DNA from: Vitrella brassicaformis CCMP3155 | Lineage: Eukaryota > Protista > Chromerida | Direction of reading: 5' to 3' | Assembly (NCBI GenBank): GCA_001179505.1 | Contig: CDMY01000982.1 | Location: 62,001-126,000, forward strand | Length of the DNA stretch: 64,000 bases | Shown: piece after piece, positions 323 through 21,499 of the stretch | How the letters are laid out: every line of letters begins with the position of its first letter | Numbering within the stretch: the stretch's first letter is position 1 | Program-made: the position numbers and the translations under genes | The notes under the pieces: generated by a model | Seen by the model: the letters and a program-made list of their open reading frames with translations, nothing else | Told to the model about the DNA's origin: nothing | The model's database searches: none

Positions 323-3300
323 ATGGCCTCTCCTCTTGGCAAGTTGAGCATCCGTGTCCGCAACAAGGCCCTATCGAGAGCCCATGTTCGTGTGGTGGAG
401 GCGAGGGAGCGGAAGACAGTCGAGCAGGAGCTCGAGAAGGCCGTGGAAAAGGGGGAGAAGATGGAGCGGGGGGGTGGAGTCACGGCTGGGTTTGGCGGCG
501 TTGAGATTGGACTGGAGGCAAACAGAGGCACAGAAATACGTGCGTGAGCATCGCCATGATCAGCACACAAAGGGCCTCTCAGTCTGCATCAATTGATTGT
601 TCAGGTGAGAAGACAGAGGAGAAGAGCTTCGTTCGCATCGAGTATGGCAAGCTGAAGGAGTCAAGCGACTGGTGAGACAGATAGACGCTGAATGCCTAGC
701 ACAAAAGACAGCTGTGTCTTTTTGTGAATCATATCATGTACAAGGACGACGATTGATCCCGGCAGAGACGCCACTTTGTCGAGTTTCGAATGGACCTACA
801 TCTCTATTGTGATTGGTTCGTTCTGACAGCAACCAAGATGATCCATCAGGCGCCATTGTCACATTGGAATGCCTCTGTCGCAGAAGACTCCGCCTATCAG
901 CTGCTCAACCAACTCATACACCCAGAAGAGCACCCCAATGGCATCGCAATCATAAGGGTGAGGCGAACCCACTACTGCAGATGCAGAACCATTCCAGCCA
1001 TCGTGCTGTCTGTTCGGCACAGGCCAACCCCCCATATGTTTCGCTTCTGGCCGAGACCATCGAGGCGGCGAATATCGAGGCCAAAGAGGCAGCCTTTCGC
1101 CTGAACAATGTCGCCACAAAGCTTGTTTTGACATCGAAAAGCATGGCTCGTGGTGTGTCAGTCGGACTCGAAAAGAAGAAAGGGCGGGAGGCACATGAGG
1201 AGGCCGACGCCTCGCAGCTGTGGATTTGGCAGATGGACACTTTCTGCCCGAAGGACGCTTTCCGTCTGGTGCCGAAGGCTTTCCCTGACAAGACACTGGC
1301 GGTGAGCCCATTGATGGGCAACAAGCTTGTTGTCGCCTCGCCAACGGCCAAGACAGACGCCATGAACACCAAGGGAGAGGCGAAATTCGAGCAGTGGATC
1401 ATGGAGACAGCCGAGATGCAAGACATCTTCCAGCCAATGGCAGGAGCCCTGTGTGGCTCGCTGTGCTGCCAGCCCTCCAAGGAACAGCTGCTCGTGTCGC
1501 CCGACATTCAATTCGAGCAGGGGAATGAGGAGAGGCGGGGGAGCAGCAAGTTTGATGACGAGACGGTGAGCCTCAAGTGTGTCGGTCTGCCGGATTGTGT
1601 GGTGGGTGTCAAGACCTCCGGCAATATCAAGAGTCTGGTGCTGATGAAGAAAGACAGGGGGGTCCCAATGGAGGCCCTGTGGTGTTGCAGCCAGCCAACC
1701 AAAACAGTCAGCACCAGCTATGGCAGCCAGCGATACTACTTTATTATGCTTTACTTGCAGGTCAGCCTTTTCGAAGCTTGTGCGGAGGGTCATAAGGAAG
1801 CTGTGCTGCAAATAATCAAAGCCAAAGGCATAAAGTGCTTGCAGGAAGCCGACGAGGTGAGACACAGCTGTACGACACGTGCTTCATCTACAATGGGGCG
1901 AGCATTGGTGTTCGGTGGGTGAATTGCAGGAAGGATTCACACCGCTGCACTACGCCGCCCAAAATGGCCATGAGGACATCTGCAGAGACATTGTGCTTAA
2001 GGGCGGCAAAGACCTCATCAAAAAGCAGACGAAAGTCCAGGTGAGCCAAGGACTGACAGCATAGGAAATGCAAGAGGCGCTCATCTTGACCTCTTTCAGG
2101 GCGAGCCTACCGTGCTGCATCTGGCGGCTAAAAAGGGTCGTATGAAGGTTGTGACGATACTGCTCGAGTTGGGAGGGGTCGATCTCTTGACACTCAAAGA
2201 TCCGGTCCGAGATATCTGTGTGTCTCGTTGTCTGATACGTTTTCCTTTCTGTCGTTGCAGCAAGGTGACACACCGTTTCATAATGCTGCGCTGGCTGGTC
2301 ACGTCGGTGTGCTGAAGGCGATGCACGCCAAGGGGGGCAGGCCACTGCTGGACCAACAGGGATGGGTAAGAGGAAGACACAGCTGCAACGGATGCCGACC
2401 TGTTCTATATGGGTGCAGTATGGCAACTGTGCCATCCACTGGGCAGCTCAGAAGGGTCATGTGGATGCGGTCAACTTGTTTATGGAGTGGGGCGGAATAC
2501 AGAAAGAGCTCCAACGGCGCGATAAGGTGGGAAATGTCACATGCAGTGCATCAGCCGATAGGATGTCTTGCTGTATAGGACGACAGCGCACCCTTCCACA
2601 TGGCTGCGTATTTTGGTCACGTCGGTGTGCTGAGGGCGATGCACGCCAAGAGGGGCAATGCACTGCTTGACCAACAGGGAAAGGTGGGAAGACACAGCTG
2701 CCACTGAGGTCTACACACTTTCTGGTGTATATTGTGCAGTTTGGCTTCTTTGCCATCCACTGGGCAGCCTGCTCAGCAGCCTACAATGGTCATGTTGGTG
2801 CCGTCAACTTGTTGATGGAGCTTGGACGAATAGCGGAGCTCAGCAAACGCGACGGGGTCCTCCCCTTCTCGCACACACTCATCGGTCAAGAAACCGTCTC
2901 CTACTGTGTCTGTGTCGTGCTATATTAGAACAACAATACACCCTTCCACATCGCTGCGATGAATGGTCAAGTGGCTGTGTTGATGGCGATGCACGCCAAA
3001 GGGGGCAGGCCGCTGCTGGACCAACACTCAAACGTAGGCGAGACACGGCTGCCACTGAGGTCTACACACTTCCTGGTATATATTGTGCAGAGTGGCGACT
3101 TTGCCATCCACTGGGCAGCCTACTATGGTCATCTTGATGCGGTCAACTTGTTTATGGAGCTTGGAGGAACAGCAGAGCTCAGCAAACGCGACGGGGTCCT
3201 CTCCTTCTCGCACACACTCATCGGTCACAAAAACCGTCTCCTACTGTGTCTGTGTCGTGCTGTGTTAGAACAACGACACGCCGTTCCACGTCGCTGCGCG

Positions 3301-4677
3301 TGGTGGTCACGTCGGCGTGCTGAGGGCGATGCACGCCAAGGGGGGCAATGCCCTGCTGGAACAACAGGGACAGGTGAGAGGAGAGACACAGCGCAACAGA
3401 CAGATCTGTACTCCGGGTGTATGTTGTGTGCAGGGTGGCTTCTACCCCATTCACTTGGCAGCTGGGAAGGGTCATGTTGATGCGGTCAACTTGTTGGTGG
3501 AGCTAGGCGGCCGCAAAGAACTCGACAAGCGCAATGAAGTGGGAAGAACAGCTAGAATTGTCCACTGTGTCGCTAATGCTGATGGTTATGTAGAACAACA
3601 ACACACCCTTTCACAGTGCTGCCATGAATGGTCACGTCGCTGTGCTGAAGGTCATGCACGCCAAGGGGGGCAATCGGCTGCTGGACCAACAGGGAGCGGT
3701 GAGAGGAGAGACACAGTTGCAACAGACAGATCTGTACTCCGGGTGTATGTTGTGTGCAGGGTGGCTTCTACGTCATTCACTTGGCAGCTCAGCAGGGTCA
3801 TGTCGATGCGGTCAACGTGTTGATGGAGCTGGGCGGAATAGCGGAGCTCGGCAAACGCGACGGGGTCCTCCCATCTCTCGCACGCACTGGCCAGATATAC
3901 AGCGTCTGTCTTTGTGCTCTTGTGGTTGTGCAGGTCAACGATACACCCTTTCACAAAGCTGCGTTTGTTGGTCATGTCGATGTCCTGAAGGCGATGCACG
4001 CCAAGGGGGGCAATACGCTGCTCGACCAGCAGGGAACGGTGGGAGGAGAGACACAGCTGCAACAGACAGATCTGTACTCCGTGTGTATGTTGTGTGCAGT
4101 TTGGCTACTATGCCATTCACATCGCAGCTCAGGAGGGTCATGTTGATGCGGCCAACCTGTTGGTGGAGCTAAGCGGAATAGCAGAGCTCAGCAAACGCGA
4201 TAAAGTCCTCCCATCTCTCACGGACCGCGTCGGTTGGAATGTCTATCTTGCTTTCTTTGTCTTGATGGCTGCTGTAGGACAACGCTACACCGTTCCACGT
4301 CGCTGCGCTGGATGGTCACGTCGGTGTGCTGAAGGCGATGCACGCCAAGGGGGGCAATGGGCTGCTGGACCAACAGGATGATGTGAGAGAGGAAGAGGGT
4401 GATATCAACAGACAGAATCACATTGCGTGTTCTGTGTGTGCATTTTGGCCATTTCCCCATCCACTTGGCAGCTTGGAAGGGCCACGTTGAAGCCGTCAAA
4501 CTGTTGGTGTCCTGGGGGGGCGTTCAGATGCCCAGCAAGAAAACCAATAAGGTGCAGTTTCGTGCGTGACTCGTCGCTTTTGTCTCAGCACATGTGTTGC
4601 GTGTTATGCAGGGCAAGACTCCACTGGACATGGCGGAGAGTGACGAGATGCGCAAACTGCTCAACAGCTACAGATAG
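323..4677 (+). CDS. Multi-exon gene: uncharacterised N-terminal domain followed by ~18 ankyrin repeats; 5' structure uncertain, may start upstream
   Basis: Spliced exons give EGFTPLHYAAQNGHEDIC, GEPTVLHLAAKKGRMKVV, then alternating TPFHxAAxxGHVxVL / AIHxAAxxGHVDAVNL repeats and a C-cap [21 protein letters not shown] (TAG 4675-4677). GT-AG phase-0 introns separate the repeats. The N-terminal exons (323-1740) could not be fully resolved. Confidence 0.8.
2261..4551 (+). repeat. Tandem array of 7 exon-intron-exon-intron units (~320-350 bp), each encoding two ankyrin repeats
   Basis: A-type exons start at 2261, 2579, 2929, 3269, 3594, 3934 and 4278. Intron sequences also recur (e.g. gagacacagctgcaacagacagatctgtactcc; gtcctcccctnctcgcacacactcatcggtca). 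Confidence 0.95.
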
Positions 4678-5471
4678 CCAATGCCTTGTTGGGTTTGGGC
4701 TGTTGTTCGTCGGTGTGTCGGTCTGTGTGTCGTGTCGCTGATCTGCCTAGTATGCCATGTGTCTTGAAATGACAAAGAGAGACACGCTGTGCCAGCTTGC
4801 ACCGGTCGACGCGAACCGGCACAATTAAAGCAATCGACACTCACTCGGTCCCATCATCCAGCAGCGGCGCTTTGATGACCGCAAAGAATTTCTCAGGACG
4901 CTCGCCACGTGTGTGCTCCCTGCATGGCTGTGTGGACTGAAGACCGCACTGCATGTCTTGCAATGTTCCAATGAAGGCATGCCTTTGTTTGCATTGCTGT
5001 CGATCGTTTGTCTGTGACTGACGCGTACATAAACCATTCAGTCAGTCGTGACACTAGCTGCGATAAAAAAGGTTCGTCACACTGACCGTCACATGTACGT
5101 ATGACTGACCTGACTGACGCGCGCACTTCCGATCTTCTGATAAAGGGAGGACATATGACACGAAGAACATTACTTCACCTCACCTCCCCTGTGACCTGGG
5201 CTGGCGGGCACAAAAAAAGTGCCTCTGCCTGTTCCGACATATATACGCATAGCATACACACACACAGGTAGATCGATGAGAACACACACGCATAGCATAG
5301 CACATATTGTACACACTCAGACACAGACGCAGATACAGATACAGAGATTCGGATACACACATATGTAGACAAACAAACACAGAAAGATTCCCATCCGGCA
5401 ATCCAATCAAGGATCCTTCCTTCTCTGAAGAAAAACCAAACCCGTGCATCACATCACACCGCCCGGCCGAG

Positions 5472-16942: not shown

Positions 16943-19900
16943 ATGCCTGCTCGAGCTTCCACCGCACCAGGCCCCTGTCCAGCGGCGTGTCATCGTAGAC
17001 GGCAAAGTCCCCTTGAGCTCCGATGCAAAGGAGGCGAACGACGGGAGATCGAGCTCGTGAACGAACGCCAAGATGGTGTCGCCAGCTGCCCTCCCTCCCC
17101 CCACCTCCGAAGTAATCATGCTTCGACGAGATCTCCGAGACGCGCGCTAACCCTGGGCCAGCCCCCAGTCTTCCCCCGGCCCCCCCCNNNNNNNNNNNNN
17201 NNNNNNNNNNNNNNNNNNNNNNNNNNNNNNNNNNNNNNNNNNNNNNNNNNNNNNNNNNNNNNNNNNNNNNNNNNNNNNNNNNNNNNNNNNNNNNNNNNNN
17301 NNNNNNNNNNNNNNNNNNNNNNNNNNNNNNNNNNNNNNNNNNNNNNNNNNNNNNNNNNNNNNNNNNNNNNNNNNNNNNNNNNNNNNNNNNNNNNNNNNNN
17401 NNNNNNNNNNNNNNNNNNNNNNNNNNNNNNNNNNNNNNNNNNNNNNNNNNNNNNNNNNNNNNNNNNNNNNNNNNNNNNNNNNNNNNNCCCCCCCCCCCCC
17501 CCCCGCCCCCACGCCCTGTCACCCTCCCGTCATGTTCGGAGGTGTAATCAGGTCGGATGACCTCACTGTCGAGGACAAGATGCTTGGTCAGCGGGAGAAC
17601 ATCACACATCATCACACGTGTTTGTTTGAAGGCGCCACTGATGAATGTGTTCTTCGTGTGTCGGCAGCTTGGCAGGCGAGGGCGGGGAAGGGACGGTGTA
17701 CAGGGGGGTGTGGCGAAGTCAAGATGGAAATATTTCCGTGGCTGTCAAGACGTACAAACCCAACGAGGAGCTTGACCGCGAGGTAGTACGGCTACAGAGC
17801 ATGTGTGCGTAGCCATCATGACGGCCACGTGTGCATGTCTGCGTCACGGTGTGCAGTCACAGTTCATGGAGGTGCTGGAGGAGGCCATGCCGATGCTCCC
17901 CCTTCGCCACCCCAACATAGTGCGGCTGCTGGGCGTCTCCCAGCAGACACGGCAAATACCGCCTCGTTATCGTCACGGGTGACCATCCTTCGCTTCATTC
18001 AGCTCCCTGTCGGTACGTCGTTTGTTCTTCTCAGAGTTGTGTACGGGCGGCTCTCTGGCCTCCTATTTGGCAAAATATGGAGCCCCACCGCCGGAGCTGC
18101 GAGACAGATTCATGAGAGAGGTGCATGAAGCGCACAGAAGGAGTGTCGTCTGTGTCTCCATCTATAAGTGTGTGCAATGGATCTCAGATATGTGCAGGTG
18201 TCCAGTACTTGCATGATCAGAAGATCGTGCACCGCGACTTGAAACCCGAAAACATACTGGTCTCAACACATCACTCTTGCCATTTACTCTTGCATTACTA
18301 GGATCAACACGCGTGTGTTCGCCCGTATTTGTCAGCTGACGGAGGGTCTCGTCATCAAAATATCGGATTTCGGGATAAGCCGGGGCGCCGAGAGAAAAAC
18401 CACTGTGACCTCAGGTATCTGCAGAAAACAAAAGGGTGCGAACGAGACACACATGCTTTCGCGCTGCAGCTCTTGGAACCGCCCAGTATATGCCTCCCGA
18501 GGGCATCGAAACGACTTGTAAGTATACCGAGATAAGATTATATACTTACATTGATATGAATCACTGTGTCTGGTGCATTCATAGTGGGCAAACTGACGAC
18601 GAAAGCTGACATTTGGGCTGTTGGCGGCATCGCAATTGAGCTACACGGAGGTAAGAGACAAGAAACAGCACAGCTGCAACACGAGACGGCAATTTGGTGC
18701 AGGCCGACCGCCTTTCGAGGGCCTGGGGCAGATACCGATCGGCCGCAAAGTCGTCGACAAAAAGGAGGCGAGATATTTTCACATCTGCTTGTCGGACTGA
18801 TTCGGCCCGAACATGCCTGCATCCGCTTTGTTTCGATTAGATCCCTGACATCCCGCAATCCCTGCCCTCGCATGTCAAGAACGCCATCAAGGCACGCCTA
18901 ACAAAAACCACAGCATTCCGTGCTCTTACTGTCTCTCCATGGTGATCAGAGTTGTTTCGCCTTCAAAGCGGCCAATCGGCCAACAGCCACACAGGTCGTA
19001 TGAGCTTTCATCAAGGGTGAGAAAGCGCTGGGGCTCACATACTCGGTGTGTGTACATGGTAGTTTCTCGATCAACTGGGGCTGTCTCCTTCGATGTCAAG
19101 CGGACAGCCGACGGATACGACTGAGGAACCGCCGAAGAGCCCATGGGAATGGCTATTTGGCGGAAAACCAAAGCGACAAGGTCCGTCTACACGTCTTCAA
19201 TTGCAAGTCGCCAACATAGGGGGTTTACGCTAATGAGCTTCTTTCGGCCTACAGATGCTCTTTCGCTTCCTGCGGCTCGTGGCTCCACCGGCAATGTGTC
19301 TCCCGCCGGCCATTCACCGGCCGTCCACATGAGCATGTCCAACACCGTGACCGGGCCGCCCAGCACTGCGTCTCCCGCTCAGTCGGCCATTGAGGGAAAG
19401 GTGAGTGAGACGGGCAGGTAGGCTTTCCATCCCACATGTACCTGCACAATCACATGACGTGTTGGAGTGTGGTGGTGTGCATCTGGCAGTTGGGGTCTAC
19501 TACGTCCACCACGGCTCCTCCACCTCGCTACTACGTCCCTCCCTCCACCACATACCCGCCCGGTAGCTACGTCCCTCCCTCCACCACATACCCGCCCGGT
19601 AATCACAGGAAGGGGGCAGGAGGGAGGGAAGATCAGCAGAGATCTGACGGCATCTGTGGACACACAGGCGGGAAAGCATGTCGGGAAGCCAGCTACGATT
19701 GCCAACTGTGTCAACTGTGTGTGTATGGTGTCCTTCCTCAGTTGATCCGTCGTCTGCAGGTTTCAGCTACGGCACGTACCCGTCACCGTACGGCATGCCG
19801 CTTGGTCCGTACGGGTACCCGGCTGGTTCGTATACCCATGGGTACCCGGCTGGTCCGTATGGCTACCCGGCCTACCCGCCCCATCTCGTGCAGACCAATA

Positions 19901-20788
19901 TCTTTGACGCAGCCAAGGTCGGTGATGTGCAGTCCGTCACTTTGCTGATCGCACAAAATGAAAAGTGCCTCGACACAAGAGACAACGACGGGGTGATGCA
20001 TTGAGAAGACGACACAGGTGGAATCAGTGGTCTGTGTTTTTCATTCCTGCAGAACACGCCCTTCCACGACGCTGCGGCTTATGGTCACGTCGGTGTGCTG
20101 ATGGCGATGCACGCCAAGAACGGCAAGCCGCTGCTGGATCAAAAGGATAACGTGAGACAGGCATACCTTGCAACACATGGCGGATTCTCGAACACATGGT
20201 CATTTGTGTGCAGAAGGGCGACTATGCCATTCACTGGGCAGCTGACAAAGGTCATGTTGATGTGGTGAACTTGTTGGTGGAGCTAGGCGGCCGCGAAGAA
20301 CTCGACAAGCGCGATGAAGTGCGAAGAACAGCTAGAATTGACCACTGTGTCGCTCGTGGCTGTAGCGAGCCACCCTGCTGGTTTTGTAGAACAACTGCAC
20401 ACCCTTCCACCTCGCTGCGTTTTGTGGTCACGTGGATGTGCTGAAGGCGATCCACGCTAAGGGAGGCAAGCTGGACCAACAGACCAAGGTGCATTGACAG
20501 ACCGGCAGTTTACTGGATTCTTGCGTGTCTGTATGCATTTGTGTGCAGAGTGGAGAGTACCCATTCACTTGGCAGCTTGGAAAGGCCACGTTGAAGCCGT
20601 CAAGCTGTTGGTGTCCTTGGGGGGCGTTCAGATGCTCAGCAAGAAAGCAAATGACGTGAGCAAGAAGAGGGCACTCGTCGCTTGTGTCTCATCTGTTCAT
20701 CACGTGTGTGTGTCTTATGCAGGGCAGGACTCCGCTGGACGTGGCGCAGAGTGACGAGATGCGCAAACTGCTCAACAGCTACACATAG
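16943..20788 (+). CDS. TKL-type protein kinase + Pro/Tyr/Gly-rich linker + C-terminal ankyrin repeats; contains an assembly gap and an apparent +1 frameshift; start uncertain
   Basis: LG|[16 protein letters not shown] (17670-17783), [68 protein letters not shown], then [13 protein letters not shown] and ankyrin exons ending [21 protein letters not shown] (20786-20788). Confidence 0.8.
17188..17487. other. Assembly gap (300 N) flanked by poly-C tracts
   Basis: Run of exactly 300 N with C homopolymers on both sides. Confidence 1.
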
Positions 20789-21499
20789 CCAGTCTCTTGT
20801 CGGGTTTAGGCCGTTGTTTGTCGGTGTGTCGCTCATCTTGCTGTGTCGATTAAGGTGTGGGCTGTTGTGTGTCGGTGTGTCGTTGCGTTTGTCTTCCTGT
20901 CGTTGCTCATAAGCATGCTGTGACATACCGGGACTGAGCAATGTCGAGAAACAATCCACATGTGTCTTTCTCTGCCAAGGTCGACCAGATGTGTCTTATG
21001 TCGGCATCCGGTGCCTTCCAGTGCAGCTAAGTGTCCGACGTGAGTGAGTGGACTGCCGTGCGTGCATCGCTATATGGCTTCAAAGTACCACATCAGCCCC
21101 CCGGCTGTCGGTGTCACTCATCCACACACACAAATGAATGTCCCAACGCATGCACCCAAAAATACCCACACACACACCCATTCTTCACAAGCAGCTGTCT
21201 GTCTTTGGTGTGTTGACGTATGTGTCCTCAACCCCCCCCCTAGCTCCCGACCAACCGAGTGACTGCTTTGAGCAGTAGCTACTACGTCATTGTATTGTGT
21301 GTCCACCTGTCTGTCTCCTGGGACCACTTTAAGTAAGCCTTATTCATGTCTGCCTGTCAGCCAGCCAGCCGCCATACCGGCCGGCCGGCCGGCCGGCCGC
21401 CCACTTATGCACTGATATAGAGAGGAGAAAAGGGAAGAGAGAGTCGATAGCGATAAAAGGACAGCTGGTCTGTCTGTCAGCCCACCATCCATCCATCCG

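What the first reader, a model, noticed from the sequence alone, without database searches (positions are those of the whole stretch)
20054..20830. Same ankyrin cassette (exons, introns and 3' flank) grafted onto two unrelated N-terminal domains
Seen: the ankyrin module of the kinase gene closely matches that of the gene at 323-4677. Exon ttgttggtggagctaggcggccgc.aagaactcgacaagcgc.atgaa and the following intron gt.gaagaacagctagaattg.ccactgtgtcgct are shared (3490-3573 vs 20270-20353). The C-cap GAGTGACGAGATGCGCAAACTGCTCAACAGCTACA and the post-stop sequence are also shared (4647-4720 vs 20748-20830). One copy follows a TKL kinase with 4 A/B repeats, the other an orphan domain with 14. Inference: DNA-level cassette shuffling producing effector + variable-sensor proteins.
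Basis: partly seen in the sequence, partly recalled or inferred. Interest (0 to 1): 0.75.

Follow-up and report, generated by a model that had tools for sequence, protein, structure and literature searches.

The report
Ankyrin tail swapped between gene families
In the alga Vitrella brassicaformis, a kinase gene had its ankyrin-repeat tail replaced at the DNA level by the tail of an unrelated, lectin-like gene family 16 kb away; this is a well-mapped case of exon shuffling, an already known evolutionary process.

Summary
Window 20053-20831 (four one-exon ankyrin repeats, C-cap exon, 43 nt past the stop) matches the end of gene A (323-4677) at BLASTN E 1e-63 and 1e-72. The match includes parts of three introns and the 3' flank. 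The N-termini are unrelated.

The reading needs sharpening.
- Gene B belongs to a family of at least 22 kinase loci. At least 17 of them carry a conserved tail of their own, found at 40 or more places at 70-86% DNA identity, introns included.
- B keeps that family's N-cap exon and the intron after it. From the next exon on it carries the last four repeats plus C-cap of the other family (N-domain plus ankyrin array; gene A and paralogues on C466, C243 and C738).
- The 5' breakpoint lies at 20036-20056. The 3' end of homology is 20831.
- The swap is about as old as the A/C466 duplication (exons 83%, introns 64%). A younger patch (20246-20354, 90-96%) includes an intron 32-mer found only in A and B genome-wide.
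- B appears frameshifted in its kinase. Loose cassette fragments lie elsewhere.
- The "orphan" domain occurs only in Vitrella and is probably a divergent beta-trefoil.

The scan had already noted this ankyrin family on other DNA of this genome. The mapped cross-family swap is new here.

The parts
323..1760 (+). Gene A N-terminal domain, about 385 aa, Vitrella-only and probably a divergent beta-trefoil. Exons 323-539, 605-671, 745-815, 884-957 and 1023-about 1760.
   Evidence: Reading frames and splice sites. Agrees with the annotated protein P0012. No Pfam hit. Only 6 cluster representatives among 1.8 billion proteins; the four looked up are all Vitrella.
1761..4677 (+). Gene A ankyrin array: N-cap, 2 special repeats, 14 alternating A/B repeats (one per exon) and the C-cap exon 4612-4677.
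   Evidence: Unit list. Pfam Ank hits on single exons. P0012.
3269..3574 (+). Gene A counterpart of B's first A and B repeats, plus the start of the next intron.
4279..4720 (+). Gene A counterpart of B's last A and B repeats, the C-cap and 43 nt of 3' flank. The acceptor of the last B exon reads AT instead of AG at about 4445-4446.
   Evidence: In P0012 the annotators spliced around the lost acceptor.
17533..19880 (+). Gene B kinase exons and Pro/Tyr-rich linker. 83-90% identical, introns included, to a paralogue on C269 that has no ankyrin tail. An extra 4 nt relative to C269 at about 17937-17950 shifts the frame.
   Evidence: Exon-level Pfam hits to PF00069 (E 1e-8) and PF07714.
19881..20052 (+). 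Gene B N-cap ankyrin exon (19881-19989) and its intron, both of the kinase-family type.
   Evidence: Alignment with kinase-family tails L053 and L050. Identity 64.5% and 66.7% to the kinase-type tail against 52% (background) to gene A. DNA hit to C374:64267-64333.
20053..20831 (+). The replaced cassette: exons 20053-20151 (A), 20214-20318 (B), 20390-20488 (A), 20551-20655 (B, using the second AG of a tandem acceptor), C-cap 20723-20788 including the stop, and 3' flank 20789-20831.
20246..20354 (+). Younger patch, 90-96% identical to gene A 3466-3574. It covers the end of an exon and the first 36 nt of the following intron.
   Evidence: Sliding identity. The intron 32-mer is unique to A and B genome-wide.

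Best explanation
Gene B is a chimera of two Vitrella-specific gene families.

Its kinase, its linker, its N-cap ankyrin exon and the intron after the N-cap belong to the kinase-ankyrin family. That family's standard tail is N-cap, four repeats and a C-cap.

From the first repeat exon (20053) to 43 nt past the stop (20831), B instead carries the terminal four repeats, C-cap and start of the 3' UTR of the other family (N-domain plus ankyrin array), specifically of the A/C466 lineage.

The piece moved as genomic DNA, introns included. The likely routes are ectopic gene conversion or recombination between the two homologous tails, or insertion of a duplicated fragment into the intron after the N-cap. 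Every repeat is a separate phase-0 exon, so the reading frame survived.

Later, a short conversion of about 110 nt between A and B, which lie 16 kb apart, made 20246-20354 nearly identical to A. The expected effect was to give a kinase the target-binding surface of the other family.

Shown: the chimeric anatomy, the breakpoints and the family context. Inferred: the recombination mechanism, the direction of the short young patch, and any function. B now looks like a decaying copy.
For: 1. Identity switches at one point. The N-cap and its intron are closer to a kinase-type tail (64.5% and 66.7%) than to A (52% and 52%, which is background). Every exon from 20053 on is closer to A (76-92%) than to the kinase-type tail (56-64%). 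Alignment A3 shows the same.
2. The kinase-type tail (1026 nt) hits at least 40 places at 70-86% identity, introns included. None of these lies on C982, C466, C243 or C738.
3. B's cassette DNA hits only arrays of the other family and loose fragments.
4. Of 22 kinase loci, 20 have a downstream ankyrin exon and 17 a kinase-type tail; B has none of that type. Of 16 N-domain loci, 11 have downstream ankyrin exons and none has a kinase-type tail.
5. Exon trees. B's terminal B exon groups with the terminal exons of A and C466 (support 100/97). B's other B exon groups with A_3437, C466_6646 and a fragment (93/92). The kinase-family units sit on separate long branches.
6. B's four repeats are colinear with the last four of C466. 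Gene A has four extra units there.
7. Kinase-type tails have an extra phase-2 intron inside repeat 4. It is absent from B, A and C466.
8. Introns 1, 2 and 4 and the 3' flank are more similar between B and A than shuffled sequences ever were.
9. The intron 32-mer is unique to A and B.
Against:
- B's 3' flank beyond 20831 matches nothing in hand. So it is not shown that kinase-family sequence resumes downstream, as a simple conversion tract would need.
- Present identity between the two tail types (56-64%) is low for homologous recombination.
- B also shares derived states with the fragment at C982:211 kb, so gene A itself may not be the donor.
- No transcript or read evidence for the junction was obtained.
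- B carries an apparent frameshift.
Confidence: 0.8

Rival explanations
1. Reverse direction: the tail type arose in a B-like kinase gene and was donated to genes A and C466.
For: The direction of the young 20246-20354 patch is open. The matching unit in A (3437-3574) is unusual among A's own B units in its exon end and intron.
Against: B's units nest inside a clade that also holds the more distant family members. C243's terminal unit is sister to the A/B/C466 terminal units. The whole N-domain family shares this tail type and its exon pattern. B is the only kinase gene seen with it.
Confidence: 0.07
2. No transfer: both tails descend vertically from one ancient module, and B's tail only looks like A's because of selection on the repeats.
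For: The two families do share an older homologous module: alternating A/B repeats, one exon per repeat, and a similar C-cap.
Against: Selection does not explain shared intron and 3' UTR sequence, the sharp switch of affinity at 20053, the missing kinase-type intron, or the absence of any DNA hit between B's tail and 40 or more kinase-type tails.
Confidence: 0.03
3. Assembly artefact: the scaffold wrongly joins a kinase gene to the tail of another gene.
For: The family is repetitive. A 300-N gap lies 350 nt upstream of the kinase start. Both genes show lesions that could be sequencing errors.
Against: There are no Ns between 17488 and 20900. B's tail is only 75-85% identical to any other copy and occurs once, so it is not a collapsed copy. 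The junction lies exactly at an intron/exon border and the reading frame is kept.
Confidence: 0.06

Closest known systems
Exon-shuffled candidate receptor families of the brown alga Ectocarpus: NB-ARC-TPR and ROCO-LRR (PMC3341825; PMC11378527)
   Same: One repeat per phase-0 exon. Lineage-specific expanded families. Repeat exons are duplicated and exchanged at the DNA level while a signalling domain stays constant.
   Different: Here the repeats are ankyrin, not LRR or TPR. The organism is a chromerid alveolate. The partner domains are a kinase and a lectin-like domain. The event mapped here is a block transfer of a whole tail between two families, not the scrambling of single exons within one family.
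Animal kinases with C-terminal ankyrin repeats (RIPK4, ANKK1); named from my own knowledge
   Same: Architecture: kinase, linker, ankyrin repeats.
   Different: No evidence of shared descent. The group assignment of the Vitrella kinase was not tested. In Vitrella the ankyrin tail is a modular exon array shared with a second family.
Fungal NLR-like proteins with highly similar ANK, TPR or WD40 repeats reshuffled by recombination; named from my own knowledge
   Same: Repeat arrays that change by unequal recombination and conversion, joined to varied N-terminal domains.
   Different: There is no NACHT or NB-ARC domain here. The exon-per-repeat structure is absent in fungi.

Membership tests
Ankyrin repeat (Pfam PF00023 / PF12796) | 33-residue repeats matching the Ank profiles | tested here: met
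   A single exon, 20214-20318, hits PF00023 at E 3e-6. P0001, P0004 and P0006 hit Ank_2 at E 5e-19 to 2e-58.
Protein kinase domain (PF00069 / PF07714) | Catalytic-loop and activation-segment motifs matching the profile | tested here: met
   Exon 18197-18259 hits PF00069 at E 1e-8, above the curated cut-off. Other exons give weak PF07714 hits. Searched exon by exon only.
Protein kinase domain (PF00069 / PF07714) | Uninterrupted reading frame through the domain | tested here: not met
   An extra 4 nt relative to the C269 paralogue at about 17937-17950 puts the next part of the exon in another frame. It could be a real lesion or a sequencing error.
   No spliced kinase protein could be handed to a classifier by reference.
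Ricin-type beta-trefoil lectin (PF00652 / PF14200) | Significant match to the family profiles | tested here: not met
   No Pfam hit at E <= 1 for exon 4 or for P0002, P0003 and P0005. No sequence match in the PDB outside the ankyrin part.
Ricin-type beta-trefoil lectin (PF00652 / PF14200) | Three-fold internal repeat with Q-x-W-like motifs and a trefoil fold | tested here: inconclusive
   Three conserved x-Q/A-L/x-W positions at trefoil-like spacing. Language-model neighbours are trefoil lectins, but at a score of only 0.76. The AlphaFold models are poor (pLDDT 31.6 and 39.4). The one confident piece of about 60 residues matches beta-trefoil lectins at rmsd 2.3-2.9 A, with Foldseek E >= 0.07.
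Exon shuffling of a repeat module (as in Ectocarpus, PMC3341825) | One repeat per exon, phase 0, lengths in multiples of three | tested here: met
   B's exons are 99, 105, 99, 105 and 66 nt, all starting and ending in phase 0.
Exon shuffling of a repeat module (as in Ectocarpus, PMC3341825) | The same DNA segment, introns included, in genes with unrelated remaining parts | tested here: met
Gene conversion tract | Recipient-type sequence on both sides of a donor-type patch | tested here: inconclusive
   The 5' side is kinase-family type. The 3' side beyond 20831 matches nothing available.

The most novel reading that the evidence does not exclude
Tail cassettes may be exchanged repeatedly by conversion across both families. 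Broken genes and loose fragments (gene B, C982:211 kb, C982:28 kb, C217) would then act as a standing donor pool that gives kinase and lectin-like proteins new binding surfaces. That would be a germline analogue of pseudogene-templated diversification.
Probability: 0.1. Interest if true: 0.8.

Novelty: new variant of a known kind. Interest (0 to 1): 0.5.

Why it matters
This is a rare case in which a domain swap between two gene families can be read directly from the DNA, with both breakpoints, the donor lineage and the recipient's original state identified. It shows that the one-repeat-per-exon, phase-0 layout of these Vitrella ankyrin arrays really does allow whole binding modules to move between proteins with different output domains. 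It links two private, fast-evolving families of a coral-associated relative of the apicomplexan parasites. It also suggests a test: do the tails of A and B bind the same partner?

Tried and rejected
- A full catalogue of N-terminal partners could not be made. Partner counts therefore rest on the coordinates of hits.
- Two word-index protein searches with the ankyrin regions of P0007 and P0012 were swamped by generic ankyrin proteins. Neither found an annotated gene B protein.
- Two AlphaFold runs on the N-domain, with 6 and 10 sequences in the alignment, gave unusable models. The Foldseek search gave no significant match.
- A profile search against PDB sequences hit only designed ankyrin proteins, through the ankyrin columns of the alignment.
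- A literature search for Vitrella plus ankyrin found nothing on these families.
- Retroposition is rejected because the introns came along.
- My first exon-3 model of gene A (766-957 in one frame) was wrong. I corrected it to 745-815 plus 884-957 by comparison with paralogues and P0012.
- Spliced protein models of A and B were never joined for any tool. They were searched exon by exon by reference, or through database proteins returned by the tools.

Full report
**Source and context**

The window is G000:C982:62001-126000 of a 72.7-Mb, 1064-contig, intron-rich genome. Database proteins that match the genes studied here come from Vitrella brassicaformis CCMP3155. Nothing here is human. Spliced protein models were never joined for a tool. 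Exons were searched one by one by reference, or database proteins returned by the tools were used instead.

Yes.
- BLASTN of gene B's region against gene A's region gives three colinear matches: 20054-20354 with 3276-3574 (81%, E 1e-63), 20385-20469 with 4273-4357 (84%), and 20560-20831 with 4456-4720 (84.6%, E 2e-72).
- A 32-mer from that intron occurs only at these two places in the whole genome.
- Feature by feature, B against A gives: exons 76-92% (82.6% overall), intron 1 66%, intron 2 69%, intron 3 54% (background), intron 4 69%, and the 43 nt after the stop 84%. After that the similarity stops. Shuffled controls give about 50%, with a maximum of 55-64%.
- Gene A has 14 alternating A/B repeats and B has 4.
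- The N-termini are unrelated.

**Gene anatomy**

Gene A:
- The N-domain exons are 323-539, 605-671, 745-815, 884-957 and 1023-about 1760.
- They are followed by an N-cap, two special repeats, 14 one-exon A/B repeats and the C-cap exon 4612-4677.
- This agrees with the annotated 988-aa protein P0012.
- The acceptor of its last B exon reads AT instead of AG.

Gene B:
- The kinase exons start at 17533, with Pfam kinase hits on single exons.
- A Pro/Tyr-rich linker runs to 19880, and the N-cap ankyrin exon is 19881-19989.
- The repeat exons are 20053-20151, 20214-20318, 20390-20488 and 20551-20655, and the C-cap is 20723-20788.
- All ankyrin exons are phase 0.
- Relative to its closest paralogue, B has 4 extra nt at about 17937-17950 that shift the frame. 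B may therefore be a pseudogene, or this may be a sequencing error.

**The two families**

Gene A's family:
- Gene A has full-length paralogues on C466 (CEM15501.1), C243 and C738, and more distant ones elsewhere.
- The N-domain is found at 16 loci. Eleven of them have type-A ankyrin exons downstream.

Gene B's family:
- B's kinase belongs to a family of at least 22 loci, and 20 of them have a downstream ankyrin exon.
- The standard tail of that family is N-cap, four repeats and C-cap. It is conserved at 70-86% DNA identity, introns included, at 40 or more places. None of these is on C982, C466, C243 or C738.
- The standard tail also has an extra phase-2 intron inside repeat 4.

Both families use alternating A/B repeats, one per exon, and a similar C-cap. 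They therefore share an older module.

**Gene B is a chimera**

- Its N-cap exon and the following intron align with kinase-family tails up to the acceptor. They are 64.5% and 66.7% identical to such a tail, against 52% (background) to gene A.
- From exon 20053 on the preference flips. Identity to A is 76-92%, against 56-64% to the kinase-type tail.
- B's cassette DNA finds only arrays of A's family and loose fragments in the genome.
- In exon trees, B's terminal B exon groups with the terminal exons of A and C466 (100/97). Its other B exon groups with A_3437 and C466_6646 (93/92). C243's terminal unit is the next relative, and kinase-family units lie elsewhere.
- B's four repeats correspond in order to the last four repeats of C466. 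Gene A has four additional internal units there.
- B lacks the kinase-type intron in repeat 4.
- The 5' breakpoint therefore lies at 20036-20056, at an intron/exon border. Homology ends at 20831.

**Age and further events**

- B-A divergence (exons 83%, introns 64%) is similar to that between the whole-gene paralogues A and C466 (79% and 69%). The swap is therefore not recent.
- The patch 20246-20354 is 90-96% identical and probably reflects a later short conversion between the two genes, which lie 16 kb apart. Its direction is open.
- B also shares derived states in the last intron, C-cap and 3' flank with a solitary fragment at C982:211 kb (last intron, C-cap and 3' flank only). The direct donor may therefore have been a third, now lost, copy.
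- B's closest kinase paralogue, on C269, is 83-90% identical up to 19880, introns included. It then has no ankyrin tail at all.
- In B the linker runs straight into what is the end of an intron in other family members. The kinase/tail boundary has therefore been rearranged more than once.

**Mechanism**

The transfer was of genomic DNA, because the introns were kept. Ectopic conversion or recombination between the homologous tails fits the in-register replacement of four repeats plus C-cap. Insertion of a duplicated fragment into the intron after the N-cap is equally possible. I could not show that kinase-family sequence resumes downstream of 20831.

**The "orphan" domain**

- It has no Pfam hit.
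- Only six cluster representatives exist among 1.8 billion proteins. The four looked up are all from Vitrella, and transcripts exist for two.
- Three weak leads point to a divergent ricin-type beta-trefoil:
  - a three-fold Q-x-W-like pattern;
  - trefoil lectins as language-model neighbours, at a score of 0.76;
  - local matches of the only confident piece of the model to trefoil lectins.
- This is a lead, not a result.

**Comparison with what is known**

The closest described system is the exon shuffling of phase-0, one-repeat exons in Ectocarpus candidate receptors (PMC3341825; PMC11378527). The Vitrella case differs in four ways: the repeat type, the lineage, the partner domains, and the transfer of a whole tail block between families. 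Earlier notes of this scan had already described the fast-evolving kinase-ankyrin family and conversion between neighbouring genes on other DNA of this genome. I did not retest their selection claims.

**Verdict**

This is a real and well-delimited inter-family tail replacement. It is a new variant of a known evolutionary process, probably in a decaying gene copy, and of moderate interest.

Noticed in passing
L053:1296-5316 (G000:C374:62296-66316): One kinase gene is followed by two tandem copies of the complete kinase-type ankyrin tail. The second copy has an in-frame stop in its first repeat exon.
   Followed up: partly
L051:1086-3370 (G000:C374:54001-56286); also C965:2366(-)/4819(+): Kinase-ankyrin genes and N-domain (trefoil-like) genes sit head to head about 0.5-2.5 kb apart on two contigs. 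Some N-domain genes there seem to lack ankyrin repeats, so the two families may be functionally paired.
   Followed up: partly
L032:7057-7227 (G000:C982:211057-211227): A solitary fragment holding only the last intron, C-cap exon and about 45 nt of 3' flank of the cassette. It is 90% identical to A and 85% to B, shares derived states with B, and sits next to an unrelated minus-strand gene.
   Followed up: partly
L035:7245-7705 (G000:C982:28245-28705): A decayed three-exon fragment (B, A, B units, with frameshifts) of the same array type, 34 kb upstream of gene A and with no N-terminal domain nearby.
   Followed up: partly
L037:3180-5330 (G000:C217): An isolated A plus B ankyrin exon pair embedded in long tandem (satellite-like) repeats.
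   Followed up: no
L031:5812-5904 and L031:7162-7256 (G000:C466): The C466 paralogue of gene A has an in-frame stop in one repeat exon, which the annotated model CEM15501.1 skips. It also has a 29-nt internal duplication in its C-cap exon that changes the C-terminus.
   Followed up: partly
P0002 (CEM21308.1, 714 aa): A family member with two copies of the trefoil-like N-domain and no ankyrin repeats.
   Followed up: no
window 17188-17487: A 300-N assembly gap flanked by long C runs, just upstream of the kinase gene's start codon at 17533. Gene B's promoter region is therefore incomplete.
   Followed up: no
window 4776-4949 and L031:7390-7565: The flank downstream of gene A is 89% identical to that of the C466 paralogue. 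This is higher than in the coding region (about 75-78%).
   Followed up: no
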